64,000 bases of DNA, from NCBI RefSeq assembly GCF_006345805.1, contig NW_021824847.1:591-64590 (forward strand), in the 5' to 3' direction. Origin of the DNA: Octopus sinensis. Taxonomy: Eukaryota. The notes under the pieces are model-generated. The model searched no databases and was not told the origin of the DNA. It saw only the letters and a list, made by a program, of their open reading frames with translations. Shown piece after piece: positions 26,021 to 64,000 of the stretch; the stretch's first letter is position 1; each line of letters opens with the position of its first letter. The translations under genes were made by a program, and so were the position numbers.

Positions 26021-26054
<34 letters not shown>

Positions 26055-26149: not shown

Positions 26150-26183
<34 letters not shown>

Positions 26184-31879: not shown

Positions 31880-31987
31880 CGTCATATACTATGGGAGACT
31901 TCTGTCTGAAGAACACTAATGCTGGTATTACCTTCACACCATATTTGTCACCGAACGTTTGGCTTTGCAATTTCCCATAACGACAGT
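31880..31987 (-). CDS. Exon 3, thioredoxin-fold membrane protein
   Basis: Acceptor ctctacttccag|, donor g|gtaggt; CRYGKLQSQTFGDKYGVKVIPALVFFRQKSPIVYD(G), Trx cis-Pro and beta-strand pattern; 108 nt, phase 1-1. Confidence 0.9.
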
Positions 31988-32049
31988 CTGGAAGTAGAGA
32001 GAAGAGATAGAAGTGAGAAACTGACAAACAGGTTTCGTTGGTTGTGAAA

Positions 32050-32470
32050 TCATCATCATCATCATCATTTAGCGTCCGCTTTCCATGCTAGCATGGGTTG
32101 GACAGTTCAACTGGGGTCTGTGAAGCCGGAAGGCTGCATCAGGCCCAGTCAGATCTGGCAGTGTTTCTACGGCTGGATGCCCTTCCTAACGCCAACCACT
32201 CCGTGAGTGTAGTGGGTGCCTTTTACGTGCCACCTGCACAGGTGCCAGACAGAGCTGGCAAACGGCCACGAACGGATGGTGCTTTTACGTGCCACCGGCA
32301 CGGGGGCCAGGTGAGGCTGGCAACGGACACGAACGGCTGGTGCTGTTACGTGCCACCGGCATGAGGCCAGTCAGGGCGGCGCTGGCAACGGTCACGAATG
32401 GATGGTTCTCTTACGTGCCACTGGCACTGGTAACTCATCTGCAATTTCCATTGATCGATTTCGATTCTGA
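32050..32470 (-). mobile_element. RTE family D 3' UTR
   Basis: Same consensus, reverse orientation. Confidence 0.8.
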
Positions 32471-32508
32471 TCCTCTGAAATGCTAGCTTTTATGTATAAC
32501 AGATTATA

Positions 32509-33750: not shown

Positions 33751-33849
33751 CAGATTATACACAATTTGAAAGAAACAAATACATAAAGCAGGAGGGCAAA
33801 TACATATAACAGTAGTGTGGAGCAAACGAGAAGACAACATCGATAGAAA

Positions 33850-34000
33850 CATGTGGTACATCATCATCATCACCATCTATTTTCCATGCTGGAGTGGCAT
33901 GGATGGCTTGACAGCAGCTGGTCAGCCAGAGCGTTGCACCAAGCACCGATTGCCTGGGTCCTTTTCCTAATGCCAACCACTTTACAGAGTGCACCAGAGG
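33850..34000 (-). mobile_element. Degenerate RTE family D UTR
   Basis: catcatcat...ccatgctgg...cctaatgccaaccact. Confidence 0.5.
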
Positions 34001-34091
34001 ATATCCTTGTTGCTTATTTTGATTTTTATCCCCTTATTTCGAAATTGTACTAAATTCTGGTGCCTCAACTTAAGTACCATATTCATCTGAA

Positions 34092-34130
<39 letters not shown>

Positions 34131-34131
<1 letters not shown>

Positions 34132-34541
34132 TCTTTTCTCTTTTACTGGTTTCAGTCATTTGACTGCGGCCATGCTGGAGCACCGCCTTTAATCGAGCAA
34201 CTCGACCCCGGGACTTATTCCTTTGTAAGCCCAGTACTTATTCTATCGGTCTCTTTTGCCGAAATGCTAAGTAACAGGGACATAAACACACCAGTATCGG
34301 TTGTCAAGCAATGATAGGGGGACAAACACAGACACACAAACGCATATATATATATATATACATATATATATACATATATACGACAGGCTTCTTTTAGTTT
34401 CCGTCTACCAAATCCACTCACAAGGCTTTGGTCGGCCCGAAGCTATAGTAGAAGACACTTGTCCAAGGTGCCGCACAGTGGGACTGAACCCGGAACCATG
34501 TGGTTGGTAAGCAAGCTACTTACCACACAGCCACTCCTGCA

Positions 34542-34588
<47 letters not shown>

Positions 34589-34930
34589 GGCATAGGTGTG
34601 GCTGTGCTTCCCAACCACATGGTCCAGGGTTCAGTCCCACTCCATGCCACCTTGCGCAATCGTCTTCTACTATAGCTTCGGGCCGACCAAAGCCTTGTGA
34701 GTGGATTTGGTACACAAAAACTGAAAGACACACACAAATAGATATATGTGTGTGTGTGTGTCTCTGCTTGTCCCCCACCGTTACTTGACAACCGGTGTTA
34801 GTGTGTTTACACCCCCATAACTTAGCAGTTTGGCAAAATAGGCCGACAGAATAAGTACCAGGCTTTAAAATATAAGTCCTGGGGTTGATTTGTTCGACTA
34901 AAACCCTTCAAGGCAGCAGCCAAATTGCTA
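34131..34930. mobile_element. Head-to-head SINE A pair (34131-34541 minus, about 34590-34930 plus)
   Basis: Divergent copies separated by (TA)n. Confidence 0.8.
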
Positions 34931-34972
34931 AAACAAGAAAAGATAAAAGAAAAGATGATATATATATATATG

Positions 34973-35048
34973 TGGAGGCGCAATGGCCCAGTGGTTAGGG
35001 CAGCGGACTCATGGTCGTAGGATCGCGGTTTTGATTCCCAGACCGGGT
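34973..35048 (+). mobile_element. SINE C head fragment
   Basis: tRNA-like head only. Confidence 0.75.
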
Positions 35049-35175
35049 ATTGGCATTGGGAGCAAGCTACTTACCACACAGCCACTTCTATGCCTATGAC
35101 TAAAATTTATTAACATACTACAGAGCATATAAACGAATCATTTACTTACAGATGGACAAATATTTTAGTTTTGTT

Positions 35176-35723
35176 TGAACCCTTTCGTTACCAATCTGGC
35201 TGAAACCACCTCTGGCTCTGTAATACAAATGTCTTGTTTCCATAAGTCTTCAATTAAAATCTTCTACCAAACCTTAGTCACAATTTATGTTCCTAACACT
35301 AGCTTAATGATAACTAAGTTATTTTACTAAATTCTTTATTATATTTAAAATTAATTGAAAGAAACAGAGCATCTCAAAATAAATACAGTAACAAAAGGGT
35401 TAAAGACATTCAGTCAAATGTGTCTTCAATTTGCACAAGATTTGACTGCTATTTCTAACAAGTCCAAACAACTATGTGAAACAAAATCTGCAAATTAACC
35501 CTTTTCATACCAACCCGGTTGATACCGCTTCTGGCTCTGTAGTACAAATGTCTTGTTTCCATAAGTTTTGAATTAAAATCTTCCACCAAACTTTAGTCAC
35601 AATTTATGTTCCTAACACTAGCTGAATGATAACCAAGTTATTTTACTAAATTCTTTGTTATATTTAAAGTAATTGAAAGAAACACAGAGCATCTTAACAG
35701 AAATACAGTAACGAAAGGGTTAC
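35176..35723. mobile_element. Two adjacent piggyBac-like MITEs (35176-35403, 35495-35723)
   Basis: (TT)AACCCTTT...AAAGGGTTA(A) termini; same body as the outer element at 29164. Confidence 0.85.
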
Positions 35724-35832
35724 TAATTCCAAGAAGAAAATGCCTGCAGCAAGGAAAACAAGGAACAACAACGAAACAGTGGAGACAAGAAGATCTGGTA
35801 AATGGTTAAAGAACAAAAATGCTCAAAGTTAC

Positions 35833-35913
35833 CTTCCAGGAATGTCAAATCAGCCTTTAGTAATTTTTGCATTTCAAACAAAGCAGAATGGTACTCAGCA
35901 TTTATTTCATCGT
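35833..35913 (-). CDS. Exon 2, thioredoxin-fold membrane protein
   Basis: Acceptor ttttttttcctcacag|, donor g|gtaact; (Y)DEINAEYHSALFEMQKLLKADLTFLE(D); 81 nt, phase 1-1. Confidence 0.85.
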
Positions 35914-35956
35914 CTGTGAGGAAAAAAAAAGACAAGCAAAAAACAAAAAAAGTCAT

Positions 35957-36868
35957 TTAAGAAGAATTGGCAGATAATAAGGAATGGTTAAAGCAGAGGT
36001 TCCCACCCAAGGTCCATAGAGCCCTGAGGGGGGTCTACATAAGATTTTATAGTTACTCTTTTACTCTTTTACTTGTTTCAGTCATTTAACTGAAGCCATG
36101 CTGGAGCACCGCCTTTAGTCAATCGAGCAAATTGACCCCAGGACTTATTCCTTTTAAGAAGAATTGGCAGATAATAAGGAATGGTTAAAGCAGAGGTTCC
36201 CACCCAAGGTCCATAGAGCCCTGGGGGGGGGTCTACATAAGATTTAATAGTTACTCTTTTACTCTTTTACTTGTTTCAGTCATTTGACTGAGGCCATGCT
36301 GGAGCACCGCCTTTAGTCAATCGAGCAAACTGACCCCAGGACTTATTCCTTTTAAGAAGAATTGGCAGATAATAAGGAATGGTTAAAGCAGAGGTTCTTA
36401 CCCAGGGTCCATAGAGCCCTGGGGGTGGGGTCTAACATAAGATTTTATAGTTACTCTTTTACTCTTTTACTTGTTTCAGTCATTTGACTGTGGCCATGCT
36501 GGAGCACCGCCTTTAGTCAATGGAGCAAACTGACCCCAGGACTTATTCTTTTTAAGAAGAATTGGTAGATAATAAGGAATGGTTAAAGCAGGGGTTCTCA
36601 CCCAGGGTCCATAGAGCCCTGGGGGTGGGGTCTAACACAAGATTTTATAGTTACTCTTTTACTCTTTTACTTGTTTCAGTCATTTGAATGCGGCCATGCT
36701 GGAGCACCGCCTTTAGTCAAGCAAATTGACCCCAGGACTTATTCTTTGTAAGCCTAATATTTATTCTATCAGTCTCTTTTGCCGAACCGCTAAGTTATGG
36801 GGACGTAAAAACACCAGCATCGGTTGTCAAGCGATGTTGAGGGGACAAACACAGACACACAAACACAT

Positions 36869-36909
<41 letters not shown>

Positions 36910-36965
36910 TATATATATATACATATATACGACAGGCTTCTTTCAGTTTCCGTCTACCAAATCCA
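35957..36965. repeat. Four tandem 197-200-bp units built from a SINE A tail plus flank
   Basis: gaagaattgg at 35961, 36158, 36356 and 36556; the last unit continues into the rest of the SINE. Confidence 0.92.
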
Positions 36966-37361
36966 TTCTCAAGGCTCCAGCATGGCCACAGTCACATGAC
37001 TGAAACAAGAGTAAAAGAGATGAGTAATAAGGAAATGATGTGGGAGTGTGGGGGAGAGAAGAGATGGACGGTGACAGCAATGGAGATCCAGAGGCATACA
37101 TAAGGGAGGAAGGGCATCGATGGCAGATATGAGAGGGTTTTTCAGGGTAAAGAAGCATTCTGAAGTAGTGAGGGATGATATTGAGAGTATAGAATGGGTG
37201 TTAAAGGAAGTGGCTCCAAAACAAGGGATAACTGGTAACATGAAAATGGGGATGGAATATGTGCAGTTCTGCTTTCATATACCATATTTTAATGTGTATA
37301 ATGAATCCCCTAATTTTGGTGGGTCTTAAAATCTGGAAAGAAAGGTTTTGACAGAAAAGGA

Positions 37362-37737
37362 GGATCTTTTCGGTTTGATCGGCAGTTTTTAACATAATTT
37401 CCATGTAACTAAAGTATTTTAAACTTCGTATACTGGTAGAATGTGTTTATAAAACATCTTTTTCTCTTGGCTTTATTGAGAAAATTCTATAGTTTGTAAG
37501 ATATGACGTCCATTGAGGTAAAAAAAACATTCTGTGCCGTATGAATATGTCCCTCGTTTAAGAAACAGATTGGGTTTATTTATATTTCTTAAGAAAAAAA
37601 AGATACCCTTCCCCCCACCCCTAACCCTCACCCTAAAACAGATTGAAATGCAATAGATCGATACTAGGGTCATAATTATGGGTGACAATTTCATATGACA
37701 CCACTAGAAAAAACTGCTGTTCAAACTGAAAAGATCC
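37362..37737. mobile_element. GGATC MITE
   Basis: TSD gaaaagga / aaaaaggg; empty site present at about 39103-39125. Confidence 0.85.
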
Positions 37738-37752
37738 AAAAAGGGTTCCTTA

Positions 37753-38150
37753 TCTTTATATATAAAAGTAAGGTTGTGTGTCTGTCTCCTCCGATTTAGA
37801 TTCCTAACAACTCCCACATTTTGCGGTGCAGTTTAACCAAAACCGGTATCTTATAGTCGTGATTCATATCGAGCCCTTCTGGGTATTAGCACGCATCTAC
37901 AATGAGTCTATGATTTAAAAAAAAATTTACCATCATTTTTTTCCATTTTAATGCATTTTTTCGCTATTATATAAGGGAAGTAACTCTCTAAAAATGTCTA
38001 TGATGAGTCAACGATTTAAAAAAAAATTTACCATCATTTTTTTTTCCATTTTTAATGCATTTTTTTGTTATCTTTTGACTATAACTCTCTAAAAATGCTT
38101 ATATAGTTATTTCCCTTGCAAACCCGAGCAACGCCGGGTGATACTGCTGG
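37753..38150 (+). mobile_element. Helitron-like element, same family
   Basis: TC...CTGG; the empty site at about 39090-39110 shows A|T insertion with no TSD. Confidence 0.85.
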
Positions 38151-38162
38151 TATATGTTAAAA

Positions 38163-38385
38163 TAGAAGGTATTCAAAAGTCTCCATACATAGGAACAATT
38201 TATTTTTTTTATGAGAAACAGTTTATAAGAATAGTTTTTTTCAAAAAATTTAACAAGCTCTATATTGTTACCATTGTTTTGAATACACATTGCAATACGT
38301 TACCCCACTCATTGTGAACTCGTAATAGCACATCTGGTAATACCTGTTGTCATTGATATATGGAGACCTTTGAATCACCCTGTAC
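38163..38385. mobile_element. Small Tc1/mariner-type MITE
   Basis: Imperfect TIR gtattcaaaagtctccata / tatggagacctttgaatcaccctgta. Confidence 0.5.
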
Positions 38386-38570
38386 ACTAATTATTGCACC
38401 TATGAAAGAGAAACAATCTTCTAAGTGCTCTTAGTATTTACCAATCTTGCATATCTTCCATAAAGTCTACTTTCTCTATTAATATTCCCGTGATTCCACT
38501 GAGCTTCTTATGGGTCTACAGTTTGCACCAGACACCACCATACATAATTATTTTCAACACCCCTACATAC

Positions 38571-38963
38571 AGGCGCAGGAGTGGCTGTGTGGTAAGTAGC
38601 TTGTTTACCAACCACATGGTTCCAAGTTCAGTCCCACTGCGTGGCACCTTGGGCAAGTGTCTTCTACTATAGCCTTGTGAGTGGATTTGGTAGACGGAAA
38701 CTGAAAGAAGCCTGTCGTATATATGTATATATATGTATGTGTGTGTATAAGTTTGTGTGTCTGTGTTTGTTCCCCTAGCATTGCTTGACTACCGATGCTG
38801 GGGTGTTTATGTCCCCGTTACTTAGCGGTTCGGCAAAAGAGACCGATAGAATAAGTACTGGGCTTACAAAAGAATAAGTCCCAGGGTCGAGTTGCTCGAT
38901 TAAAGGTGGTGCTCCAGCATGGCCACAGTCAAATGACTGAAACAAGTAAAACAGTAAAGAGAG
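38571..38963 (+). mobile_element. SINE A, full length
   Basis: Consensus. Confidence 0.9.
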
Positions 38964-39369
38964 AGTATAGAACAGGACCATTTTCATGACAAGATTAGTG
39001 GTTTGCCTGTTTTCCTGCTTATAATAACTTTGGTTTTTACTAAGACAACTTTCAGGCCCTTTTTCAGGCGACTTTTGAACACCTTCTATTTTAACATATA
39101 TAAGGAACCCTTTTCTGTCAAAACCTTTCTTTCCAGATTTTCAGCCCCCAAAATTAGGGGATTCATTATACACGTTAAAGTATGGTATATGAAAGCAGAA
39201 CCTGAAATTTCTTTTCTAATTGTATTACAGATTCAGCTATAAGAACAAAGTTATCAGCATAGTGCGGCTCCCATAGACAACCAGTTTTAAACTCCTTTGT
39301 TATGGCCCGGAGGACAATGATAAACAGGAAGGCGTTGGGAGCTGTGTCCTGGTGAAATTCTACCTTCAT

Positions 39370-39675
39370 GCTAAGAGCACCATCCGAGTGTGATCGTTAC
39401 CAACGTCGCCTTACTGGCACCTGTGCCGGTGGCATGTGTAAAAAGATTTGAGCGAGGTCATTGCCAGTACCGCCTAACTGGCCCTCGTGCCGGTGACACG
39501 TAAAAAGTACCCACTATACTCTCGGAGTGGTTGGCGTTAGGAAGAGCATCCAGCTGTAGAAACTCTGCCAAATCAAGATTGGAGCCTGGTGCAGCCATCT
39601 GGTTCGCCAGCCCTCAGTCAAAATCGTCCAACCCATGCTAGCATGGAAAGCAGACGTTAAACAATGATGATGATG
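39370..39675 (+). mobile_element. RTE family D 3' UTR
   Basis: Same consensus with (GAT)n tail. Confidence 0.8.
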
Positions 39676-39969
39676 CTAGTTTGTTGTGTACTCATTGCTA
39701 ATTCTCTCCTTACTGACCACATCCCTGCATATGGCTCGGACAGCTCTTACCAGCCATTGACCTATTTCTAGCTCTTGCACTGTCCACCAGATCAGGGAGC
39801 AAGGGGCCTTGTTGAAGGCTTTCTCCAGGATGATGGAAACTAAATATAGTGGCTAAATATTTCTGTGGTTACCTTACTAGGAAGACATCATGAGCAGTGT
39901 CTCCCTGGCACAAAAACCAAACTGCATCTCACCTAAGTTAATTCTCTTTCCTAATTAATTCATATCAAC

Positions 39970-40300
39970 TCATGGCTCAGTGGTTACAGCGTCAAACTTA
40001 CAATCGTGAAGTTGTGAGTTCAAATCCCAGACCAGGCTGTGTGTTGTGTTCTCAAGCAAGATACTTTATTTCACGTTGCTCCAGTTCACTCACCTGTAGA
40101 AATGAGTTGCGACGTCACAGGTGCCAAGCTGTATCGGCCCTTTTGCCTTTCCCTTGGATAACATCGGTGGCGTGGAGAGGCAAGGCTAGTGTGCATGGGC
40201 AACTGTTGGTCTTCCATAAACAACCTTGCCCGGACTTGTGCCTTGGAGGGTAACTTTCTAGGTGCAATCCCATGGTCAGTCATGACCGAAGGGGGTCTCA
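39970..40300 (+). mobile_element. tRNA-type SINE with CORE-like central domain (family E)
   Basis: ggctcagtggtta.. A box, gagttcaaatccc B box, then caagatactttatttcacgttgctccagttcactcacctgtagaaatg. Confidence 0.55.
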
Positions 40301-40639
40301 GCTCAGCTCAGCTATTATCACACCCACTCAATTAAGGGGTCTTTATTGTGTTGTGAGTAAATTGGTGACCTCCCCGGGACTGCTGATGTCATGCAAAAAG
40401 CACCCAGTAAAATGAAAGTCCTTAGGAAAAGTATTGAGCCCTTGAAAACATGCCAACACAGACATTGGAGCTAAACACAGTCTTTCAGAGCATCAAATCC
40501 TATCAAACTGTCCAAAACGCTGCCAACATGGAAGTCAGATGTTCAATGATGATGACAGTGGTGATGATGAAGTTTGTGTGTATCTAAACATATATATATA
40601 TGGAAATTGTAATTAAGATACCCATGCTGGTGACACCAA

Positions 40640-40795
40640 TCGGAGTGGTTGGCATTAGGAAGGGCATCCAGCTGTAGAAACATTGCCAGATCAGACTGGG
40701 CCTGGTGCAGTCTCCTGACTTCCCAGACCCCGGTCGAACTGTCAAACCCATGCTAGCATGGAAACGGACGTTAAACGATGATGATGATGATATAT
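40640..40795 (+). mobile_element. RTE family D 3' tail
   Basis: Short 5'-truncated copy with (GAT)n tail. Confidence 0.75.
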
Positions 40796-40819
40796 ATATA
40801 TATATATGTTGGGCCTAAG

Positions 40820-41655
40820 AGGCATCAGATGTTGTGTGCAAGAGAGACTTTTGCGCTGGTATGGTCATGTGGCGAGAATGGACGAAGATAGGTGTGTGAA
40901 AAAGTGCCACACCCTGGCAGTTGAGGGGACCTGTGGAAGAGGTAACCCAGGAAAACCTGGGTCGAGGTGGTGAACACGACCTTCGAACTCTAGGTCTCAC
41001 CAGGAAATGCTGACCTATGGAAGTATGCTGTGCGTGAGAAGACCCGGCAAGACCAGTGAGAACAATCGTCCGCTGCCAGCCTCGTCTGGCACCTGTGTCG
41101 GTGATACGTAAAAGCTCCATTCACTCGTGGCCGTTTGCCAGCTCTGTCTGGCCCCTGTGTCGGTGGCATGTAAAAGCACCATCCGTATGTGTTCGTTGCC
41201 AGCCTCGGCTGGCCCCCGTGCCGGTGACATGTAAAAGCACCGTCCATTCGTGGCCGTTTACCAGCTCTGTCTGGCCCCGTGCCGGTGACACGTAAAAGCA
41301 CCATCCGCTCGTGTGCGTTGCCAGCCTCGGCTGGCCCCCGTGCCGGTGACACGTGAAAGCACCATCCGTTCGTGTTCGTTGCCAGCCTCGGCTGGCCCCC
41401 GTGCCGGTGACACGTAAAAGCACCATCCGTTCATGGCCGTTGTGCCAGCTCTGTCTGCAACCTGCAGGTGGCACGTAAAAAACACCCACGACACTCGCGG
41501 AGTGGTTGGCGTTAGGAAGGGCATCCAGCCGTAGAACACTGCCAAATCACTGGGCCTGATGAAGCCTTCCGGCTTCACAGACCCCAGTTAAACCGTCCAA
41601 CCCATGCTAGCATGGAAAACGGACGCTAAATGATGATGATGATGATGATGATACA
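40820..41655 (+). mobile_element. RTE LINE 3' ORF end plus long 3' UTR with internal tandem repeats and (GAT)n tail (family D)
   Basis: WYGHVARMDEDRCVKKCHTL..GTCGRG..RKTW; repeated gccggtgacacgtaaaagcacc units; ends atgatgatg. Confidence 0.85.
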
Positions 41656-41694
41656 CATACACACACATACAACTCTCTCTCTCTATATATAGTG

Positions 41695-42259
41695 CATCCA
41701 GCTGTAGAAACTATGCCAAGTCAAGATTGGAGCCTGGTGCAGCCATCTGGTTTGCCAGCTCCCAGGCAAAATCGTCCAACCTATGCTAGCATGGAAAGCG
41801 GACGTTAAACGATGATGATGATGATATATATATATATATACACACACACACTTTTGTGTAGATTGTTTATCCACAAAATGCTGTGTCCAGCACTCATTCT
41901 TACTGTGTATATATAATATATATATATATATATATATGGAATTTGTAGTTGTGGTACCAGTGCCGGTGATACATAAGAGAACCATCCGAACGTGGCCGTT
42001 GCCAGCACCGCATCGACTGGCCTCCGTGCCGGAGGCACGTAAAAAGCACCATCCGAGCATGGCCGTTCGCCAGCCTCATCTGGCACCTGTGTCGGTGGCA
42101 CATAAAAAGCACCCACTACACTCACGGAGTGGTTGGCGTTAGGAAGGGCATCCAGCTGTAGAAACACCGCCAGATATGACTGGGCCTGGTGGAGCCTTCG
42201 GGCTTCCCAGACCCCAGTTGAACCGGAAAAGCATGGAAAGCGGACGTTAAACGATGATG

Positions 42260-42262
<3 letters not shown>
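41695..42262 (+). mobile_element. Two further RTE family D 3' UTR copies (41695-41825, 41950-42262)
   Basis: Same consensus and tails. Confidence 0.75.
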
Positions 42263-42298
<36 letters not shown>

Positions 42299-42554
42299 TA
42301 TATATAAGTAGGTATGTTGATAGATAGATACATACATATACATAGAAAGAGAGAGAGAGTAGGTTTGCAAATGTGAGAGGGATATAAGGGATTCATACAT
42401 AAGCGTGTTCTCATACATTACAGAGATTTCAATGACAGTTTGAGTTCCAAGTTTTGCGATCGCAGAGCGAGAAAGTCGAGTAATGGTTAACATTACTTTC
42501 TATTACTCTCTCTCTCTCCATGTGTCTGTCTGTCTCCGTACACACACACACATA

Positions 42555-42615
<61 letters not shown>

Positions 42616-43391
42616 ATCTTACCATTAACTTATAATTGTGGAATTTTATGCATGATATTATTATATCGCTGTAATCTATAAGATATATATTATCGTTGGA
42701 TTCGACCCCCCAAACAAGCAATCAAATGTGATGACACATGCAGTGATGTCTACACGCATAGCATTCGTAGGATGTCGTATTTATGGTTATACATAATTTA
42801 TAAACACACTGGGTGGTTCTGATTTCCAGAGTCATCAGTTTTTCATCCACAGACTTAACTGATTAATTATAATAGCTAGCTAGGCCTTGAAACAAAATGC
42901 GCAGATCGCATTATATCTTGTATGTTTTGTAATAAAGAGGAAAATAAATGCCTTAGCTAGACAGATAAGCAAAGAGCTAAGTGAGCAAGTGATAAATAAT
43001 ATATTTGTTTTCTCTGCTCACTCCCGCCTTCTGCAATGTAAGCTAGCCATAGCTCCCCGTCTCCGCCCTCATCGCTATAGCAATTGCCGCAGAACCAAGG
43101 GACGTAACTCAAGATTGCTTACCTTTTTTTTGGTTCTTTTTCTTTTTCTTTTTTTTTTCTCCTAATGTCTCCACAGCAGCAATATAAATATATAAACAAG
43201 AGGAATGGGGGACGGAATGGATAGGAATATACCAGAATAGGAGAATAGGAATAGCGGAATGAAGTGAGAATTATTATTTTCCTTAGCAGGTGCTGTCTAC
43301 TAAAGTGTTGCGAACAATAGCAACATACATACACGCACGCACCTACGTGTCTTTATACGCACATGTATAATATACATTCACACACACACAC

Positions 43392-43465
<74 letters not shown>

Positions 43466-44169
43466 GTGCATACATGCAGCTACTTAAACGTTTACACAAA
43501 AACATATTACAAAACAAAACATAAATAAAAAATAGTCTTCCAACTAATCTCAATACTTCGTCTTTGTAGCTTTGTAGGGGGTGGGGGGAAAGGGTACATA
43601 ATCGGTCGAAGTGACCGCAGTTTCTTACTGGTATTTATTTTATTTATCCCCAAAACACTGAAGAATGAATTAGTTAAAGTAAAAACGACAACAGATTTTG
43701 AAATCAGCGCAATGAGTCAGTCCGCCCATTTCTAATAATATCAATGTCTTAATTGTTTTTTTTAATTAGGCAGCAAAACCCCCCCAGAATTTATAATGCA
43801 AGGGGGGATGAGTTTGTATGAGGTGTGTGACATTTACAACATTAGTTATATTAAATTAAGAGATCCACCAGAAATCGAAACCGTGTTCGTAGAATTCGGG
43901 AACTAACGTAAACGATAATGTTTCCTCTCTGCCAAAACCTCCAAAATTTACAAGGGAGAAGAATGAAATTTTTCAACTTTCAGTTCTTTTTTAAAAGAGA
44001 TAATAGCGACAGAAGCGAAATAGCTACAATCAAATCACAAACTCAGTTTGTTTAAAAAAAAAAAAAAGAATGCTATATTAATTGATCATAATTAAAAAAA
44101 AAAAAAAACCCGGCTCCGGGAGAACTAATTGGATGTATGTATACAGGTCGGATTGGTTTTGGTACTTAC

Positions 44170-44323
44170 AAATAAGAATCAAGGAGTGTTGAGATGTGAT
44201 GAAGCTGTGCATGCTGTTTGGCGTGACATCTTCGATAATTCGAAGGCCTTCTCGAGATGCAATGGTTCGGAATAGCGTGGAAAATGCCAGGAGTAACGTT
44301 GGCCAGCCTAAGTAGGTTGCCAT
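44170..44323 (-). CDS. Exon 1 of a tandem thioredoxin-fold type I membrane protein (signal peptide plus start of Trx domain 1)
   Basis: aacATGG start; MATYLGWPTLLLAFSTLFRTIASREGLRIIEDVTPNSMHSFITSQHSLILI; donor t|gtaagt; 154 nt, ends phase 1, t+ac=Tyr with exon 2. Confidence 0.85.
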
Positions 44324-48289: not shown

Positions 48290-49020
48290 TATATTCTTTT
48301 ACTCTTTTATATATTTCAGCCCTGCAGCTGTGGCCATGCTGGGACTCCGCCAGTGTAATCACCTTTTAATTGGCCGATTCTATGTGATTGGCTTTTGGTG
48401 AAATAGGGAATTCGATCCCGCTGCCTTCTTTTGAGTTTCCTGCCTTGATATTTGTTCATCTGGGACCTTGATTAGCAAGAAGTCATGTTGTTTCTTAAAA
48501 AGATCTACCCCCGCTCCATGGAGATCCCTCAGCTGCAGGCCCTTGAATCCCAAGCTTTTGCAGCACGTGGTTCTCGCCTTAGATGAAGCAACTGGGACTT
48601 TGGGAACAGTGCAGTGATGTCCAATTCGAGGTCTAGTATAACTCTCAATTTTTAAATTTGGAGCCAGTCCCTCCAGTATCTCCCACACATAATATCACTA
48701 CATACCTCTCCCGTCTTTGCTCCAGGGAGTAGAGTCGTAGCATCAGGAGGCTCCTTGACTGCTTGTACTACTTTTGTATCGTCGGCATAGCTAGTAAGTG
48801 TGATTGCAACTGATGGCATCTCTGAAAGAGACATCATGAACAGCAGCGGCCCCGATACAGTTCTCTGGGGCACACCACTTTCTATTACTGTCTCCGTGTA
48901 GAGGGCTCCGTTGGCTGCTGTCTTTTAAGAAGTCATGCAGCCACTATCCGACGTTCCCAGTTATGCTGAGTCTCCGTAGTTTGTGATATATCACCCCATG
49001 ATCAACCTTGCCCTTATTAG
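48290..49020 (-). mobile_element. CR1/L2-group LINE 3' part, decayed
   Basis: VPQRTVSGPLLF and YADDTKV RT motifs, WEILEGLAPN C-terminus, SINE-A-like 3' tail. Confidence 0.85.
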
Positions 49021-49029
49021 AGGCCTTTG

Positions 49030-50675
49030 CAAAGTGGGTCGTTTCTCCGAGTTTGATTGATGGTTCTCTTCTGGATGTATCATGTGGGGCTGGTCGGTAC
49101 ACAATCTGGGTCTTCCTAGATTTGACAGTGAGACAAAGGGCGCTGTATGCTCGCTTGAAGGCGTTCAGGATCTGCTAAAGGTTTCCACCCGAAAGAATTT
49201 TTTCAGCCAATGGTTTTAAGCGATTGTTCATAATCCGAGCAAGTACCTTGCCAGCAGTTGCCAACAAGGAGATTCCTCAGCAATTTCCGTATTCAGATCA
49301 TTCTCTCTTCCTCTTTTAGATAGTCACGTTGGTGAGGAGCTGGTACAGTTGATAATGGAATAGGCTTCCGCCGATTTTGTAAATCTCAGAGGGGATCCCG
49401 TCCAGCCAGCGGCCTTGTTGTCCTTCAGGGAGATGATGGTCTGTTTCACTTCAGCAATGGTTGGTAACTTGCTTAAGGAATCTAAGACGTCACTGTCAAA
49501 TGTGGTATCTTGATTAAGCAGATCTTCGAAGTGTTCTCCCCACCTCGCGTTGATCTCGGCATTTTTCTTGAGGATCGTTGATCTGTCCTTACTTTTCAGT
49601 GGGGCTTGACCACTGGCAGATGGTCCGAAGATTGCCTTCGTGGCATTAAAGTAGCCTCTGGTGTTGTTGGTATCTACAAGTTGTTGGATTTCTTTTGCTT
49701 TGTCCCTCCACCATTCGTTTTTCAGGTTTTGAGTGGTTTTCTGAACTTCGGCTTCGTATTCTTGATATTGCTTGTGTTTTGCAGTGGATCTCTGGTCATT
49801 CTGGGAGGCGATGAAGGCTTTTCTTTTTACATCGGTAAGTTGTTTGAGTTGCTCATCATTTTCATTGAACTAATCTTGATGTTTCTTGGACTTGAATCCG
49901 ATGGTTTCTTTGCAGGTGTCCACAATGGCGGTTTTCAGTTGGTTTCAGTGTTCCCCAATGGGTAACAACGGTTTCACTTCCTGCTGTAATAGTTTTTCAA
50001 GTAGTGTTAGACAGAGTTCCACTACTTTCTCGAAGTCTTGAAGGGTTTCAACATTGATATTTTGGTTTCGCTGTTTTCTCTTGGGTCGGATCATCATTCC
50101 CATGATTGATGGAAACAGTCAATGGTCTGTCCAACATACATCGGCACCTATGATTGCAGTTGTCTCCATGACATCTTGTTGGTCTCTGGCATTACAATGA
50201 CATAATCGATCAGTTGACAATGTTTGGAACGTGGATGTTGCTAGCTAGACTTTGTGTTTGGCTTTCTGGCGAAATAAGATGTTAGTGATTACCAGGTCAT
50301 GTTCTGCACATTTTGCCATAAGGAGTGTTCCATTTGCGGTGATTTTGCCAACCCTTATCTTCCCGATGGTGCCTTTCCAGAGGTTGTGATCTCTTCCAAC
50401 TCTGACATTGAAGTCTCCTAGTAAAATGATTTTGTCACTTTTGGGGATGGACGAGAGAATGTTGTCGAGGTGGGCATAGAAATCCTCCTTCACTTCATTT
50501 TTCCCGGTTGACTGTTCGGTGAGTTTGTGTAGACAATTCTTGATGGCAAAATTCACTCCGTGGACTCTTGATTGTTTCGGATCTAGCCCATTCCAGAAAA
50601 AAGTATATTGGCCTTATTCTTCCCTCAGTCGACCCTCTCCAGCTCTGTCGATCATACTCAGAGCGACGATGTCAA
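49030..50675 (-). mobile_element. RTE-clade LINE, decayed (APE endonuclease, RT start, 3' end)
   Basis: YTFFWNG, HGVNFAIKN, KIILLGDFNVRVG, LVITN, GLDGIP motifs; many stops and frameshifts. Confidence 0.9.
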
Positions 50676-53149: not shown

Positions 53150-53696
53150 TTGGGTTGTCCGGAAAGTTCGTGCCGATTTTTAAAGGAAAGAAAAAGGGTC
53201 AATAAATACTTGCCATTAATTTTTAGTCAACCAAATATGAACCGTTTTGTTGCACAATCATCTCCATCCTTCCTTTAACTTGAAAATACCCTCTTCCCAG
53301 AATTGTGGTGGTTTCATGGCAAAGAATTCATCAAGGTATCTTTTTACGTCATCCAAGGAATTGAAATTTTTACCATTAAGACTATTCTGCAGAGACTTGA
53401 ATAAGTGGAAATCCGAAGGAGCAATATCTGGTGGATATGGGGGTGGGGTAATATATCTCAGCCGAGCTGCAGCAATTTTTGTCTGGTTCCCAAAGCATCA
53501 AGTGCCGAAAATGAACTTTCTTGTCTTCCATTTACAGAATTACACAGGTTATAGGAACATAAACCTTCTTCCAGAGCTTAAACTGTGCTCTAAATGGAGG
53601 TGTAATCAAATCCCATTTTATGGACTCAACAATGTTCTCAAATAAGTCGAAAGGCAAGCTACTATAAACCGGCACGAACTTTCCGGACAACCCCAA
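53150..53696 (-). mobile_element. Mariner deletion derivative
   Basis: TIR ttgggttgtccggaaagttcgtgccg; P(Y)PDIAPSDFHLFKSLQNSLNGKNF..FWEEGIFKL motif. Confidence 0.9.
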
Positions 53697-54030: not shown

Positions 54031-54690
54031 ATCATTATTAATTAATTAATTATTTTGTCTTTGGTCAATAACTGTTATTTCCTATTTGCTTCTATTTAGA
54101 AATCAAAGGAAATGACTACTATTCCCTTCAAACATTGCTTTTGTGACCTGGACATCAATGCCTTGAAACTGACCTATTTTCCATTACACTTCAGACAGAT
54201 TCAGCACTGAGTTGCTGAAGCAGAAATATCGTTATAGCAAATATTCTGTTCAATACCACAGATTTGCTGACCAGTTGCTTGACCGTAACCACTTGAGCAG
54301 GTCCCTTAGTGGCTGACAATATGTATATCTCTGATGATTAGCAAGAATAGTGGCGGAACATTATAGCCATGTGTTGTGGGTGATTCTTTGGGATTTGAAT
54401 AAACGCAAGAAAAGCAAAATTTGAAGGAAATCTTAGCCATTTTTCGTACTTTTTAAGGATACGAAAATAGGAAATAACAATTGCTACCCAGGGGCAAAAA
54501 TCGTTTTACGGTGTTTATCGTTAATTCATTATGCATGCAGTAAATTTTAGCTTTTAACTAGAAGGATGAATTTTATAGTATTATTTATTTGTTTTATTTT
54601 GTTTATTCAATATATATATATTTTTTTCTTTGCCCTGACCACCTCATTTTGAATCGCTGTTCAAATTTCCTGCAGAAATCACAGATCATG

Positions 54691-56003
54691 CTATATCGAA
54701 GGTGAGAACGATTGGCAGCTCGGTTTTTTGTAGCAGACGTAGATTGTTGACGTGTTAGAGCGGTCGTAGCCACTGGAATATTCACAGTAGGGCGGTGTCA
54801 TTTCGCTGACACAAATCCTGCCTGAGCTGTCTCGGTTGATACTAACTTGGCTAAATACTGCTGACTGTTCACAGGAACACATGGAACATACTGAACACGA
54901 ACACGAACACGAAGGCGTCGACAAAGGAGACATATATGAATATCCTGACAAGCAGCTACAATAAGATATTGTCGAAGAATACAAGGGCGAGGAACTTCTG
55001 TCCCTTTCCTCCTTTTCAGCTTTTTTGCGCTCCTCTGAAGTATCACTTTCACCATCTTTTGAACCACGCCTTTTGCCGTCTTTGCGGCGTGATTTGCTGT
55101 CTTCGCGCCCTTTGCCGTCTTCGCGCCCTTTGCGCCCTTTGCGCGCCCTTTGCGGCCTTTGCGCCCTTTGCGACCCTTGCGTCCTTTGCGACCCTTTTTC
55201 CCACTTTTCCCACTTTTCCCTTCGCCTGTACCTTCTTCGCCTGAACCTTCTTCGCCTGAACCTTCTTCGCCTGAACCGTATTCATCGCTTGAACCGTATT
55301 CACCGCTTTCACCTGAAGAACCACTCCCGTCTTCATCTGAAGAACCGCTTGCGCCTTCCTCCTCCTCATCCTCCCCCTCCCCCCCAGGTCCTAGTTCGCC
55401 CCTCGATTTCTGTTTTCTGCGTCTCTTTGAACTACGCTTTCTAGCACGTTTAGAACTTTTGTCCGTCCCCGAACCTGAACTTTCATCGCTGCCTTCCTCG
55501 TCTGTGAGTTGCGATTCGTCAACACTTCCTTCATCCGACGCCATTATGCCCCTGCCCTTCTTGCCTCTGCCTCTCCTTTTCTTTTTGCGTTTCTTGTCTG
55601 CAGAGCTGTCGACGGAAGCCGAGTCAGAAGCCTTCTTTCTCCCTTTCTTTTTCCTCCTCTTCTCCGCCAGTTTCTTTCTCCTTCTTTCTTCTTTCTCTTT
55701 CTCCTCTTTCTTTGCTGCCTTTTCTTTATCTTCCTGTCTTCTCATCATCAATTCGAACTTGTCCGGTACATAAACTTCCTCTTCCGGCATCTCTTCGTAT
55801 GCGATACTCTGTTTGAAAAGTGGACATTCTTTTTTCGCAACACCGAACGGTGTACATTTTGTATAGTCCATGTAAAGATTGAACAACTGCCTTTCATTGT
55901 TTTTGGCCACGGTGCGTGCATAGTAGGTTTTCCAGTGGTTGTAAGCTGCATAGTCGAAGGCCTCTTGTAACTGGGTTAAGTATTTGATACGGCATCGCCG
56001 ATA
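54691..56003 (-). CDS. Large terminal exon of an unidentified gene: globular start, K/E-rich segment, acidic Ser/Gly tract, (KGR)n, Cys/Ser-rich C-terminus; apparent frameshift at about 55142
   Basis: Acceptor ttttgttttgacag| at 56004; open from 56003 (YRRCRIKYLTQLQEAFDYAAYNHWKTYYARTVAKNNERQLFNLYMDYTKCTPFG...); a second frame from 55140 continues KGRKGREDGKG...CSCSCSVCSMCSCE...FSPSI* to 54691; minus-strand AATAAA signals at about 54584-54607. Confidence 0.8.
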
Positions 56004-56059
56004 CTGTCAAAACAAAACAAAAAAATAATAATAATAATAAAATCATTAAAAAATGAACT

Positions 56060-57068
56060 GTGTAGTAAGTAGCTTGCTAACCAACCACATGGTTCCGGGT
56101 TCAGTCCCACTGCGTGGCATCTGGGGGGCAAGTGTCTTCTGCTATAGCCCCGGGCCGACCAATGCCTTGTGAGTGGATTTGGTAGACGGAAACTGAAAGA
56201 AACCCTCGTATAATGTGTATATATATATATAGGCGAAGGAGTGGCTGTGTGGTACGTAGCTTGCTAACCAACCACATGGTTCCGGGTTCATCCCACTGCG
56301 TGGCATCTTGAGCAAGTGTCTTCTGCTATAGCCCCGGGCCGACCAATGCCTTGTGAGTGGATTTGGTAGACGGAAACTGAAAGAAGCCTGTCGTATATAT
56401 ATATATATATATACATGTAGGAGTGGCTGTGTGGTAAGTAGCTTGCTAACCAACCACATGGTTACGGGTTCAGTCCCACTGCGTGACATCTTGAGCAAGT
56501 GTCTTCTGCTATAGCCCCGGCCGACCAATGCCTTGTGAGTGGATTTGGTAGACGAAACTGAAAGAAGCCTGTCGTATATATGTATATATATATATACATG
56601 TAGGAGTGGCTGAGTGGTAAGTAGCTTGCTAATCAACCACATGGTTCCGGTTCAGTCCCACTGCGTGGTATCTTGGGCAAGTGTCTTCTGCTATAGCCCC
56701 GGGCCGACCAATGCCTTGGTGTGATTTGGTAGACGGAAAGTGAAAGAAGCCTGTCGTATATATGTATAATATATATATATATATATATAATATATATATC
56801 TATATATATATATATATATATATATATTATGTATGTGTGTGGTGTTGGTGTGTCTGTGTTTGTCCCCCTAGCATTGCTTGACAACCGATGCTGGTGTGTT
56901 TACGTCCCCGTCACTTAGCGGTTCGGCAAAAGAGACCGATAGAATAAGTACTGGGCTTACAAAGAATAAGTCCCGGGGTCGATTTGCTCGACTATAAAGG
57001 CGGTGCTCCAGCATGGCCGCAGTCAAATGACTGAAACAAGTAAAAGAGTAAAAGAGTAAAAGAGTAAA
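56060..57068 (+). mobile_element. Tandem of SINE A heads (3 partial, 1 complete)
   Basis: Head unit of about 185 bp repeats, each ending at the (TA)n tract. Confidence 0.85.
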
Positions 57069-60845: not shown

Positions 60846-61112
60846 TTTGGCTTTTATACGTACATAGACATGTGCATGTGTGTGCATATGTGTATACGTG
60901 TGTGTGCGCGTGTGTGTGTACGTGCACGCAGATGTGTTGGGTCGGTGTGATGTTGGGAAGTTCGCGCGCGCAAATCACGTTTGTGTGGGTAAATGAATGG
61001 TTTTGTAGGGGATACGCAATGATGCGGGGGTCGGTCTGGGCTGTGTGTGGTGGGCATCGATCGTTAGGAATCCCGTTCTTGCTTGTGGAGGAGCCAGTGT
61101 TGAGGTGGTGTG

Positions 61113-61732
61113 AAAAAAGGAGGGAAGGAAGGAAGAAGGAAAGGAAGAAAGGAAGGAGGAAGGAAAGAAAGAAAGGAAAGAAATAAAGAAAGAAAGAAAG
61201 GATGAAAGGAGGAAGGAAGGAAGGAAGGAAGAAAGAAAGAAAGAAAGGAAGGAAGGAAGGAAGAAAGAAAGGAAAGAAATAAAGAAGGAAGGAAGGAAGG
61301 AAGAAAGAAAGGAAAGAAATAAAGAAATAAAGAAAGAAAGGAAGGAGGAAGGAAAGAAATAAAGGAAGGAAGGAAGGGAGGAGGAAGAAAGAAAGAAAGG
61401 AAGGAAGGAAGGAGGAAGGAAAGAGAGAAAGAAAGGAAGGAAGAAAGGAGGGAAGAAAAAGAAAGAAAGGAAGGAAGGAAGGAAGGAAGGAAGGAGGAAG
61501 GAAAGAAAGAAAGGAAGGAAGGAAGAAGGAAGGAAGGAAGGAAAGAAAGAAAGAAAGAAAGAAAGGAAGGAAGAAGGAAATACATAAAGAAAGAAAGGAC
61601 GAAAGAAAGGAAGGAAGGAAGGAAGGAGAAAGAAAGAAAGGAAGGAAGGAAGGAAGGAGGAAGGAAAGAAAGAAAGAAAGAAAGGAAGGAAGGAGGAAGG
61701 AAGGAAGGAGGAAGGAAATAAATAGATGAATA

Positions 61733-61763
<31 letters not shown>

Positions 61764-62791
61764 GAGGAAAGAAAGAAAGGAAGAAAGAAAGAAATAAAGA
61801 AAGGAAGGAAGGAAGAAGGAAGAAGGAAAGGAAGAAAGGAAGGAGGAAGGAAAGAAAGAAAGGAAAGAAATAAAGAAATAAAGAAAGGAAGAAAGGAGGA
61901 AGGAAGGAAGGAAGGAAGAAAGAAAGGAAAGAAATAAAGAAATAAAGAAGGAAGGAAAGAAAGAAAGAAAGGAAGGAAGGAAGAAAGAAAGAAAGGAAGG
62001 AAGGAAGGAAGGAAGGAAGAAAGGAAGGAAGAAAGGAAGGAAGGAAGGAAGGAGGAAGGAAAGAAAGAAAAAAGAAAGAAGGAAGGAAGGAAGGAGAAAG
62101 AAAGGAAGAAATAAAGAAATAAAGGAAGGAGGAAGGAAGGAAGGAAGGAAAAGAAAGAAAGAAAGAAGAAAGAAGAAAGAAAGAAGGAAAAGAAAAGGAA
62201 GGAAGAAAGGAAGGAAGAAGAGGGAAGGAAAGAAAAAAGAAAGGAGGAAGGAAGGCAGAAAAGAAAGGAAAGAAATAAAGAAATAAGAAAGAAAGGAAGA
62301 GAAGGAAAGAAATAAGGAAGGAAGGAAGGAAGGAAGAAAGAAAGAAAGGAAGGAAGGAAGGAGAAGGAAAGAGAGAAAGAAGGAAAGGAAGGAAGAAGGA
62401 GGGAAGAAAAGAAAGAAAGGAAGGAAGGAAGGAAGAAGGAGGAAGAAAAGAAAGAAAGGAAGGAAGGAAGAAGGAAGGAAGGGAGGAAAGAAGAAAGAAA
62501 GAAAGAAAGGAAGGAGGAAAGAACTACATAAAGAAAAAAGAAAGGAAGGAAGAAAGGAAGGAGGGAAAGAATGAAGGAGAAAAGAAAAGCAAGGAAGGAA
62601 GGAAGGAGGAAGGAAAGAAAGAAAGAAAGAAAGGAAGAAGAGGAAGGATAAATAAAGAATAAAGAAAGAAGAAGGAAAGAAAGAAAGAAGAAGAAGAAAG
62701 AGGAAAGAAAAGAAAGGAGGAAAGAAAAAAGGAGGAAAGAAGAAATAAAGGAAGGAAGGAAGGAAGAAGAAGAAGAAGGAAGAAGGAAGGA

Positions 62792-62850
<59 letters not shown>

Positions 62851-63070
62851 GTGGGAAGGAAGGAAGGAAGGAGAAAGAAAGAAAGGAAGGAAGGAAGGAA
62901 GGAAGGAAGGAAGGAAGGAAGGAAAGAAAGAAAAAAGAAAGAAAGGAGGAAGGAAATAAAGAAGGAAAGAGAGAAAGAAAGAAAGAAAGGAAAGGAGGAG
63001 AAAGAAAGAAAGAAAGAAAGAAAGAAAAGGAAGAAGGAAGATAGAAATATTAGAAAGAAAGAGTAAGAGG
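61113..63070. repeat. About 1.95-kb (GGAA/GAAA)n polypurine tract
   Basis: Almost exclusively A/G on the plus strand. Confidence 0.97.
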
Positions 63071-63265
63071 GGTAGAGAGATGTCATTGCATATTTAACCT
63101 TTTCATATCATATCAATAGTGTCTTTGTTGAGTGTTGTGTCTGTCCCTGGCGGTGCCATACATGGATTCCTCCTCGGGAGGGAACCAAGGTATTTTGTTG
63201 CCTGATGGGAATAAATAATGATATACAATTGAAACAAGCGTCGAAATAAACTGCTGAATGTGTAG

Positions 63266-63438
63266 GAGGCGCAGAGTGGCTGTGTGGTAAGTAGCTTGCT
63301 TACCAACCACATGTTCCGGTTCAGTCCCACTGCGGTGCACCTTGGGGCAAGTTTCTTCTGCTATAGCCCCCGGGCCGACCAGTGCCTTGTGAGTGGATTT
63401 GGTTAGACGGAAACTGAAAGAAGCCTGTCGTATATATG

Positions 63439-63502
<64 letters not shown>

Positions 63503-64000
63503 CTCTATATATATATATATATTATATAGATATATATATATATTATCAATGTTGGAGTGGCTGTGTGGTAATAGCTTGCTAACCAACCACATGGTTTCCG
63601 GGGTCGATGTGTTCGACTAAAGGTGGTGCTCCAGCATGGCCGCAGTCAAATGACTGAAACAAGTAAATGAGTAAAAGAGTATGCATGTGTGTGTGTGTGT
63701 GTGTGTGCGTGTGCGGTTTGTCTGTGTAAGATGTGGCTGTGGTGGTAAGTAGCTTGTTTACCAGCCACATGGTTCCGGGTTCAGTCCCACTGCGTGGCAC
63801 CTTGGGCAAGCGTTTTCTACTATAGCTTTGGACCGACCAAAGCCTTGGGTGAGTGTATTTGGTAGACGAACTGGGAGAAGCCCGTCGTATATTGTGTGCG
63901 TGCGTTGTGTGGTGCGTGTGTATTGTTTGCGTTTGTGTTTGTTCTCCACCACCGCTTGACAACCGGTGTTGGTGTTTTATGTCCTCGTGACTTAGATGTT
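63266..64000 (+). mobile_element. Cluster of SINE A fragments
   Basis: Heads at about 63266, 63552 and 63735; many small indels. Confidence 0.75.

What the first reader, a model, noticed from the sequence alone, without database searches (positions are those of the whole stretch)
54691..56003. Unrecognised protein with acidic tract, (KGR)n basic repeat and Cys-rich tail, split by a 2-nt frameshift
Seen: the frame from 56003 becomes incoherent after aaa ggg cgc gc aaa (55151-55138). The frame starting at 55140 resumes the KGR repeat and reads KGRKGREDGKGREDSKSRRKDGKRRGSKDGESDTSEERKK...YCSCLSG..CSCSCSVCSMCSCE..CVSEM..YCEY..VCYKKPSCQSFSPSI*. Removing gc at 55142-55141 gives a 436-aa exon. The annotated 370-aa ORF therefore probably has the wrong C-terminus. 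Inference: alternating acidic and basic blocks plus a Cys cluster suggest a nucleic-acid-binding, condensate-forming or metal-binding protein, possibly sperm/testis or lineage-specific. I do not recognise the family.
Basis: partly seen in the sequence, partly recalled or inferred. Interest (0 to 1): 0.7.

Follow-up and report, generated by a model that had tools for sequence, protein, structure and literature searches.

The report
Frame-broken last exon, octopod orphan gene
This is the last exon of an uncharacterised gene found so far only in octopods, and its reading frame is broken by a small indel inside a coding repeat, which is more likely an assembly error or very recent slip than anything biologically unusual.

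Summary
On the minus strand a splice acceptor is followed by a 402-codon open frame from 56003. A 9-nt (AAR GGN CGC = KGR) repeat is put out of register by an extra "GC" at 55142-55141. The other frame continues KGR and runs to TAG at 54693-54691, followed by two AATAAA signals.

An exhaustive HMMER search found relatives only in octopods:
- a 235-aa Octopus fragment, 91% identical;
- Argonauta hians hypothetical protein GAB1610798.1, 51% identical.

A profile search added O. sinensis LOC118761208, which carries the upstream exons only.

In Argonauta the last exon starts at the same residue. It encodes the conserved domain, the basic and acidic blocks and a Cys/Ser-rich tail in one frame. A neighbouring thioredoxin-domain gene lies in the same order and orientation in both species.

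The exact repair is not determined: -2, +1 or +7 nt all fit. Whether the break is an assembly error or a real recent indel needs reads.

No Pfam or PDB match was found, and AlphaFold models were of low confidence. Function remains inference (a disordered, probably nuclear polyampholyte with a Cys-rich tail). Interest is low to moderate.

The parts
56004..56045 (-). 3' splice site: polypyrimidine tract (tattattattattatttttttgttttgttttgac) and AG at 56005-56004
   Evidence: Sequence. The Argonauta model has the same exon boundary, tcttgcag|TAT CGG. The P0001 model joins ...KKGERP directly to YRRC.
55719..56003 (-). Conserved domain at the start of the terminal exon (YRRCRIKYLTQLQEAFDYAAYNHW...CTPFGV...KQSIAY...), about 95 aa, first reading frame
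   Evidence: phmmer against 1.84 billion representatives gave P0001 at 8e-56 (91% identity) and Argonauta P0002 at 3e-19 (51%). BLASTP gave 59% over 69 aa. DNA is 67% identical over 166 nt in the same phase. No Pfam or PDB match.
55143..55718 (-). Alternating basic (K/R runs such as KKRKKKRR and KRRRK) and acidic Ser/Gly-rich blocks, first reading frame. Includes the 15-nt GSGEE repeat (55220-55277) and the first six KGR units.
   Evidence: Translation, TRF, windowed net charge from +13 to -9. KGR units differ only at third codon positions. P0001 is collinear through the first basic block.
55101..55197 (-). 9-nt coding tandem repeat (AAR GGN CGC)n = (KGR)n that contains the frame break
   Evidence: TRF period 9, 10.4 copies, 76% matches, 5% indels.
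55141..55142 (-). Frame break: two bases 'GC' out of register between KGR units (net +2 / -1)
   Evidence: Sequence and open-frame extents. The repair is ambiguous (-2, +1 or +7 nt).
54694..55140 (-). Continuation of the coding sequence in the second reading frame, 149 codons: KGR units, then a K/R/E/D/S stretch, then a Ser/Cys/Tyr-rich tail (about 54996-54694)
   Evidence: Translation. Composition log-likelihood is +68 bits against the Argonauta post-domain region and +51 bits against the exon's own upstream composition. Argonauta has a Cys/Ser tail in the same order.
54893..54913 (-). Hexamer (TGTTCG)3.5 that encodes CSCSCS within the tail
   Evidence: TRF. Argonauta reads TCT TGT TCG TGT ATG TGC as SCSCMC in its single-frame exon.
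54691..54693 (-). Stop codon TAG of the second-frame reading
54584..54607 (-). Two AATAAA polyadenylation signals (54607-54602 and 54589-54584), which mark this as a terminal exon
   Evidence: Read directly from the sequence.
54798..55142 (-). First-frame read-through after the break (AKGAKGAKTAKG...VSAK*), the tail of the 370-aa ORF. Judged not to be the ancestral coding frame.
   Evidence: Composition log-likelihood -49 bits. Local alignment score 31 against Argonauta, compared with 73 for the second frame. Openness p about 0.03-0.05 by codon shuffle.
63099..63201 (-). Homologue of the Argonauta penultimate exon (NKIPWFPPEEESMYGTARD...). Here it is 103 nt with an in-frame TGA at 63115-63113, so it is probably skipped or decayed.
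   Evidence: tblastn with P0004, sequence, three-species DNA alignment. The P0001 model omits it.

Best explanation
The region is the terminal coding exon, plus a short 3'UTR, of a multi-exon gene with no recognised domain that is known only from octopods. It is the orthologue of Argonauta hians Ahia01_001366300 (GAB1610798.1) and of the gene whose 5' exons are annotated in Octopus sinensis as LOC118761208.

Ancestrally the exon is read in one frame. It encodes, in order:
- a conserved domain of about 70-95 aa, predicted helical at low confidence;
- about 240 aa of alternating Lys/Arg-rich and Asp/Glu/Ser/Gly-rich blocks built partly from young tandem repeats (GSGEE, KGR);
- a Ser/Cys/Tyr-rich tail of about 100 aa.

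In this assembly a small indel inside the (KGR)n repeat (net +2 / -1) breaks the frame. The downstream frame is still intact for 149 codons and ends at a stop followed by poly(A) signals. The break is therefore either a consensus or assembly error in a low-complexity repeat (favoured, about 60%) or a very recent or polymorphic slippage mutation (about 30%). The 370-aa ORF ending ...VSAK is a by-product of the break.

Function is inferred, not shown. The protein looks like an intrinsically disordered block polyampholyte. It has NLS-like K/R runs and 14 CK2-type [ST]xx[DE] motifs across the 436-aa reading. It is most plausibly nuclear or nucleolar and binds nucleic acid or forms coacervates through its charge blocks. 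The Cys/Ser tail could bind metal or form disulfide cross-links.
For: Shown:
- Homologues at 8e-56 and 3e-19, and nothing else real among 1.84 billion representatives.
- Source names.
- The Argonauta terminal exon is contiguous, covering aa 302-842 in one tblastn segment, with an identical exon start.
- Four exons of the downstream thioredoxin-domain gene are collinear on the same strand.
- The end of the O. sinensis contig aligns to window 64000-63006 at 94%.
- KGR continues in the second frame, and unit-to-unit variation is at third positions only.
- Composition log-likelihoods are +68 and -49 bits.
- The Cys-Ser motif is read from TGT TCG in Argonauta.
- The stop is followed by AATAAA.

Inferred:
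- Charge blocks, K/R runs and 14 [ST]xx[DE] motifs suggest a nuclear disordered scaffold.
Against: - No close orthologue that covers the break could be retrieved. P0001 stops at ...GKGKK, and the O. sinensis contig ends before the exon. The frame choice therefore rests on one distant orthologue and on internal evidence.
- Tail similarity to Argonauta is compositional only (shuffle z about 1), and DNA does not align there.
- The first frame stays open 113 codons after the break (p about 0.03-0.05).
- The penultimate exon is also disrupted in two Octopus species, which leaves room for real decay of the 3' part of the gene.
- There is no expression, localisation or structural evidence. AlphaFold pLDDT was 55 and 36.
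Confidence: 0.7

Rival explanations
1. The indel is a real, fixed or polymorphic mutation in this species. The protein then ends in the alternative 113-aa tail (AKGAKG...VSAK), or the 3' part of the gene is decaying.
For: Tandem coding repeats are prone to slippage. The alternative frame stays open 113 codons. The penultimate-exon homologue is frame-incompatible or stop-containing in this window and in O. sinensis.
Against: The Cys/Ser frame is intact for 149 codons with a stop and poly(A) signals, so any real break must be very recent. The alternative tail has no compositional likeness to the orthologue (-49 bits). The conserved domain is 91% identical to another Octopus species.
Confidence: 0.27
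2. A programmed -1 ribosomal frameshift joins the two frames. After the break the first frame reads GC A_AAG_GGC, which has the formal X_XXY_YYZ shape, and slipping -1 there enters the Cys/Ser frame.
For: The heptamer A AAG GGC at 55140-55134 has the right shape and direction. The downstream RNA folds at -24.5 kcal/mol.
Against: The heptamer is an automatic consequence of shifting the AAAGGGCGC repeat by 2 nt. From established knowledge (mutational studies of coronavirus-type slippery sites), G_GGN A-site codons do not support eukaryotic -1 frameshifting. The fold is not significantly stable (z = -1.83, 8 of 200 shuffles as good) and starts at the site with no spacer. The Argonauta orthologue needs no frameshift.
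Confidence: 0.02
3. This is not a gene: a chance open frame created by low-complexity, stop-poor repeats.
For: All three frames are open across 55281-55052 because of the repeat composition. The window is full of repeat-derived ORFs.
Against: The non-repetitive first 95 codons have homologues at 8e-56 and 3e-19. The exon boundary and synteny are conserved. Variation among repeat units is at third positions only.
Confidence: 0.01

Closest known systems
Argonauta hians hypothetical protein Ahia01_001366300 (GAB1610798.1, 842 aa)
   Same: Orthologous locus: same downstream thioredoxin-domain neighbour and same exon start. The domain is 51-59% identical. The order is the same: domain, then basic and acidic blocks, then a Cys/Ser-rich tail, all in one terminal exon.
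   Different: The Argonauta tail is about 300 aa and has its own 36-nt repeats (GNSEHSRFSGCS...). It has no KGR or GSGEE arrays. Its penultimate exon is intact and in frame, and it has no frame break.
Octopus sinensis LOC118761208 (uncharacterized protein, 374 aa) and UniParc UPI00069542A3 (235-aa Octopus fragment)
   Same: Same gene. The end of the O. sinensis contig is 94% identical to window 63006-64000. UPI00069542A3 is 91% identical over the domain and collinear through the first basic block.
   Different: Both models are partial. The O. sinensis model stops in the penultimate exon because the contig ends. The fragment stops before the KGR repeat. Neither tells us anything about the break.
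Nopp140/NOLC1-type nucleolar phosphoproteins (works-like comparison, from general knowledge)
   Same: Alternating acidic Ser-rich and Lys/Arg-rich blocks, CK2-type motifs and NLS-like runs.
   Different: No sequence homology. No LisH or SRP40 C-terminal domain was hit in Pfam. Nopp140 has no Cys/Ser tail.
Cys-rich low-complexity proteins: metallothioneins, high-sulfur keratin-associated proteins, sperm SMCP (from general knowledge)
   Same: C-x-C and Cys-Ser motifs in a low-complexity tail.
   Different: The tail has only 12% Cys with 30% Ser and 9% Tyr. No Pfam hit. Metallothioneins lack aromatic residues and are far richer in Cys.

Membership tests
Octopod orphan gene family (A. hians Ahia01_001366300 / O. 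sinensis LOC118761208) | Conserved YR..R.KYL..LQ..FD.AAYN.W..YY...NLYM.Y.KCTPFGV domain at the start of the terminal exon | tested here: met
   E = 8e-56 and 3e-19. 50 invariant columns across three sequences.
Octopod orphan gene family (A. hians Ahia01_001366300 / O. sinensis LOC118761208) | Same exon boundary and genomic neighbourhood | tested here: met
   cag|TAT in both. Thioredoxin-domain neighbour collinear on the same strand. 94% DNA identity to the end of the O. sinensis contig.
Octopod orphan gene family (A. hians Ahia01_001366300 / O. sinensis LOC118761208) | Single-frame terminal exon: domain, charged blocks, then Cys/Ser-rich tail | tested here: not met
   The segments are present in the right order, but in this assembly they are split between two frames at 55142-55141.
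Nopp140/NOLC1 | SRP40 C-terminal domain or LisH motif with acidic/basic repeats | tested here: not met
   No Pfam hit at E up to 1. Only the charge-block pattern is shared.
Metallothionein | About 30% Cys in C-x-C / C-C clusters, no aromatic residues, Pfam metallothionein profile | tested here: not met
   12% Cys and 9% Tyr in the tail. No Pfam hit.
Protamine / sperm nuclear basic protein | Very high Arg (or Lys) content over most of a small mature protein | tested here: not met
   10% Arg and 13% Lys overall, 17% acidic residues, 436 aa from this exon alone.
Programmed -1 ribosomal frameshift site | Functional slippery heptamer plus a stable downstream structure after a 5-9 nt spacer | tested here: not met
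   The A_AAG_GGC shape is present only as a by-product of the repeat. The fold has z = -1.83 and no spacer. The orthologue is read in a single frame.

The most novel reading that the evidence does not exclude
An octopod-specific orphan protein combines a previously undescribed conserved helical domain, fast-evolving block-polyampholyte repeats and a Cys/Ser-rich tail. It would act as a lineage-specific condensate or cross-linked scaffold, for example in chromatin or sperm packaging or in a structural material. The frame-breaking indel would be a real polymorphism that switches the C-terminal tail.
Probability: 0.1. Interest if true: 0.5.

Novelty: new member of a known kind. Interest (0 to 1): 0.25.

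Why it matters
The main value is for annotation. The 370-aa ORF has the wrong N- and C-termini. The true product is the last exon of a gene of roughly 750 aa whose other exons lie beyond the window. That gene is currently split or truncated in public Octopus models.

It also defines a small domain that is restricted to octopods in the databases searched and is absent from Pfam.

Finally, it flags a likely consensus error, or a recent slippage allele, in a coding microsatellite. This is useful for judging assembly quality and for studying how cephalopod orphan genes evolve through repeat expansion.

Tried and rejected
- Word-index protein searches with the 101-aa domain and with the 149-aa tail found nothing. 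The index evidently misses P0001 and P0002, which the exhaustive search found.
- Exact-sequence look-ups of the 370-aa ORF, of a 357-aa ATG-start version and of P0001 found no contigs. No independent assembly or close orthologue of the break could be obtained.
- A JGI metagenome scan with degenerate patterns from the domain found no relatives.
- Pfam on all pieces and homologues, and a PDB sequence search, found nothing significant.
- AlphaFold2 on shallow alignments gave pLDDT 55 and 36. These are too poor for a fold search, so none was run.
- A literature search for LOC118761208 found no papers.
- The bacterial promoter/terminator scan is irrelevant for this eukaryotic DNA.
- The 38-nt TRF period was considered as a frame-breaking duplication. 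I rejected it because the copies are only 87% alike, and the 9-nt repeat plus the 2-nt offset explains it.
- P0003 is a repeat-derived spurious hit.

Full report
**What the sequence shows.** The window is repeat-rich animal DNA. It holds tRNA-derived SINE copies, microsatellites, LINE and mariner fragments, and one tRNA-Gly gene.

On the minus strand, a long polypyrimidine tract and an AG at 56005-56004 are followed by TAT at 56003. From there one frame is open for 402 codons, to 54801. A second frame is open from 55281 to 54694.

The first frame reads, in order:
- a non-repetitive stretch of about 95 aa;
- alternating K/R-rich and D/E/S/G-rich blocks;
- a GSGEE repeat (15-nt period, 55220-55277);
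- six KGR units (9-nt period).

The six units are aag ggt cgc / aaa gga cgc / aag ggt cgc / aaa ggg cgc / aaa ggc cgc / aaa ggg cgc. They differ only at third codon positions, which is the signature of a translated repeat.

Two extra bases (gc, 55142-55141) follow. After them the same 9-nt units continue out of register. Read from 55140 they give KGRKGREDGKGRED..., then a K/R/E/D/S stretch, then a tail with 30% Ser, 12% Cys and 9% Tyr. The reading ends at TAG 54693-54691. AATAAA signals lie at 54607-54602 and 54589-54584.

**What it is.** The two word-index searches, with the domain and with the tail, found nothing. An exhaustive phmmer search with the first 101 aa against 1.84 billion representatives found two real relatives:
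- P0001, 235 aa, 91% identical, E = 8e-56;
- P0002, 842 aa, 51% identical, E = 3e-19.

P0002 is 'hypothetical protein Ahia01_001366300 [Argonauta hians]'. P0001 is a UniParc-only fragment.

A profile search added P0004, 'uncharacterized protein LOC118761208 [Octopus sinensis]'. It covers only the upstream exons. Its 32.9-kb contig ends inside our window's homologue: L002 31890-32877 matches window 64000-63006 at 94%.

In the Argonauta locus, aa 302-842 map to one uninterrupted tblastn segment. That exon begins cag|TAT CGG, the same boundary as here.

The Argonauta gene's downstream neighbour is a thioredoxin-domain gene. Four of its exons match the window on the same strand and in the same order, at 44296-44165, 35917-35831, 31988-31878 and 29074-28943, with 73-89% identity. 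Orthology is therefore supported by sequence, gene structure and synteny.

The window holds only the last exon and a decayed copy of the penultimate exon. The remaining exons lie beyond position 64000.

**Which frame is the real C-terminus.** After its conserved domain, the Argonauta protein has a K/R/E-rich basic region, then acidic Ser-rich stretches, then a Cys/Ser-rich tail of about 300 aa (CCFSCSCMCYCSTCSYSSC...), all in one frame.

Several lines of evidence point to the second frame:
- The amino-acid composition of the Argonauta post-domain region was used as a model. The second-frame reading scores +68 bits and the first-frame read-through scores -49 bits.
- Against the exon's own upstream composition, the first 50 residues after the break score +51 bits in the second frame and -10.5 bits in the first.
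- Local alignment scores against Argonauta are 73 and 31.
- The Argonauta exon reads TCT TGT TCG TGT ATG TGC as SCSCMC. The window's TCG TGT TCG TGT TCG TGT gives SCSCSC only in the second frame, and RVRVRV in the first.

There are limits to this evidence:
- The tail similarity does not exceed that of shuffled sequences (z about 1), and the DNA does not align there. It is shared composition and motifs, not residue-by-residue homology.
- The first frame stays open 113 codons after the break. Codon shuffling gives p about 0.03-0.05. I treat that as chance.

**Nature of the break.** Three changes would each produce the observed string aaagggcgcGCaaagggcgc:
- a GC insertion;
- loss of one base from cgc gNc aaa;
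- loss of 7 bases from cgc g[aagacgg]c aaa, which would restore the 'KGR ED G' unit seen twice just downstream.

The corrected length is therefore 436, 437 or 439 aa, and 'remove GC' is not uniquely justified.

The downstream frame is intact for 149 codons with a proper stop and poly(A) signals, so the break is either not real or very young. I could not retrieve reads, independent assemblies or a close orthologue that covers the site. The split of about 60% assembly error to about 30% real indel is a judgement, not a result.

A programmed -1 frameshift is formally possible, because A_AAG_GGC at 55140-55134 leads into the right frame. I consider it very unlikely for four reasons:
- The heptamer is an automatic by-product of the repeat.
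- G_GGN A-sites are known not to support eukaryotic -1 frameshifting (established knowledge, not tested here).
- The downstream fold is unremarkable (z = -1.83).
- Argonauta needs no shift.

**How it probably works (inference).** There is no Pfam, NCBI-name or PDB relative. AlphaFold2 on three- or four-sequence alignments gave only low-confidence helices (pLDDT 55 and 36), so no fold comparison was made.

From sequence alone:
- Net charge in 20-aa windows swings between +13 and -9.
- K/R runs resemble classical nuclear localisation signals.
- There are 14 [ST]xx[DE] motifs.

This is the pattern of disordered nuclear or nucleolar phosphoproteins such as Nopp140. The Cys/Ser/Tyr tail could bind metal or form disulfides. 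None of this is tested, and tissue specificity is unknown.

**Comparison and novelty.** The gene is already in public databases as hypothetical or uncharacterised proteins, so this is a new member of a catalogued but unstudied family known so far only from octopods. The Octopus models are truncated. Joining the O. sinensis 5' exons to this terminal exon would give a protein of about 750 aa.

It is not a member of the Nopp140, metallothionein or protamine families. The defining features that could be tested were not met.

**Verdict.** The cause of the break is undetermined and the function is speculative. Interest is low to moderate.

Noticed in passing
window 63099-63201 (-): Homologue of the Argonauta penultimate coding exon (NKIPWFPPEEESMYGTARD...). 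Here it is 103 nt against 95 nt in Argonauta and carries an in-frame TGA at 63115-63113. The O. sinensis copy is 1 nt shorter than the Argonauta exon and would end out of phase. The P0001 model skips it. It may be a decayed or cassette ('poison') exon in Octopus.
   Followed up: partly
window 28943-44296 (-): 44296-44165, 35917-35831, 31988-31878, 29074-28943: Four exons of a thioredoxin-domain (PDI-like) gene, 73-89% identical at the protein level to the gene downstream of the Argonauta orthologue. Order and strand are the same, so synteny is conserved.
   Followed up: partly
window 56058-56397: A tandem pair (184-nt period, 93% match) of a tRNA-derived SINE directly upstream of the exon's polypyrimidine tract. 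Many more copies of this SINE are scattered through the window and through the O. sinensis contig.
   Followed up: no
window 8035-8106 (+): A tRNA-Gly(GCC) gene that scores well (Rfam 49 bits, also called by ARAGORN) among SINE-like sequence.
   Followed up: no
window 48383-50613 (-) and 53261-53497 (-): Fragments of a LINE-type endonuclease/reverse transcriptase ORF, and a C-terminal fragment of a mariner-type transposase (…PPYPPDIAPSDFHLF…).
   Followed up: no
window 60975-63086 and 25826-26418: Very long purine/pyrimidine and A/T-rich microsatellite tracts that produce spurious ORFs of up to 703 aa. They account for the strong GC and AT skew at 60-64 kb.
   Followed up: no
tool behaviour (vs 20): The word-index protein search missed P0001 (91% identical) on the first query. 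It never returned P0002, even when queried with a 294-aa exact substring of it. Negative results from that tool are therefore weak here.
   Followed up: partly
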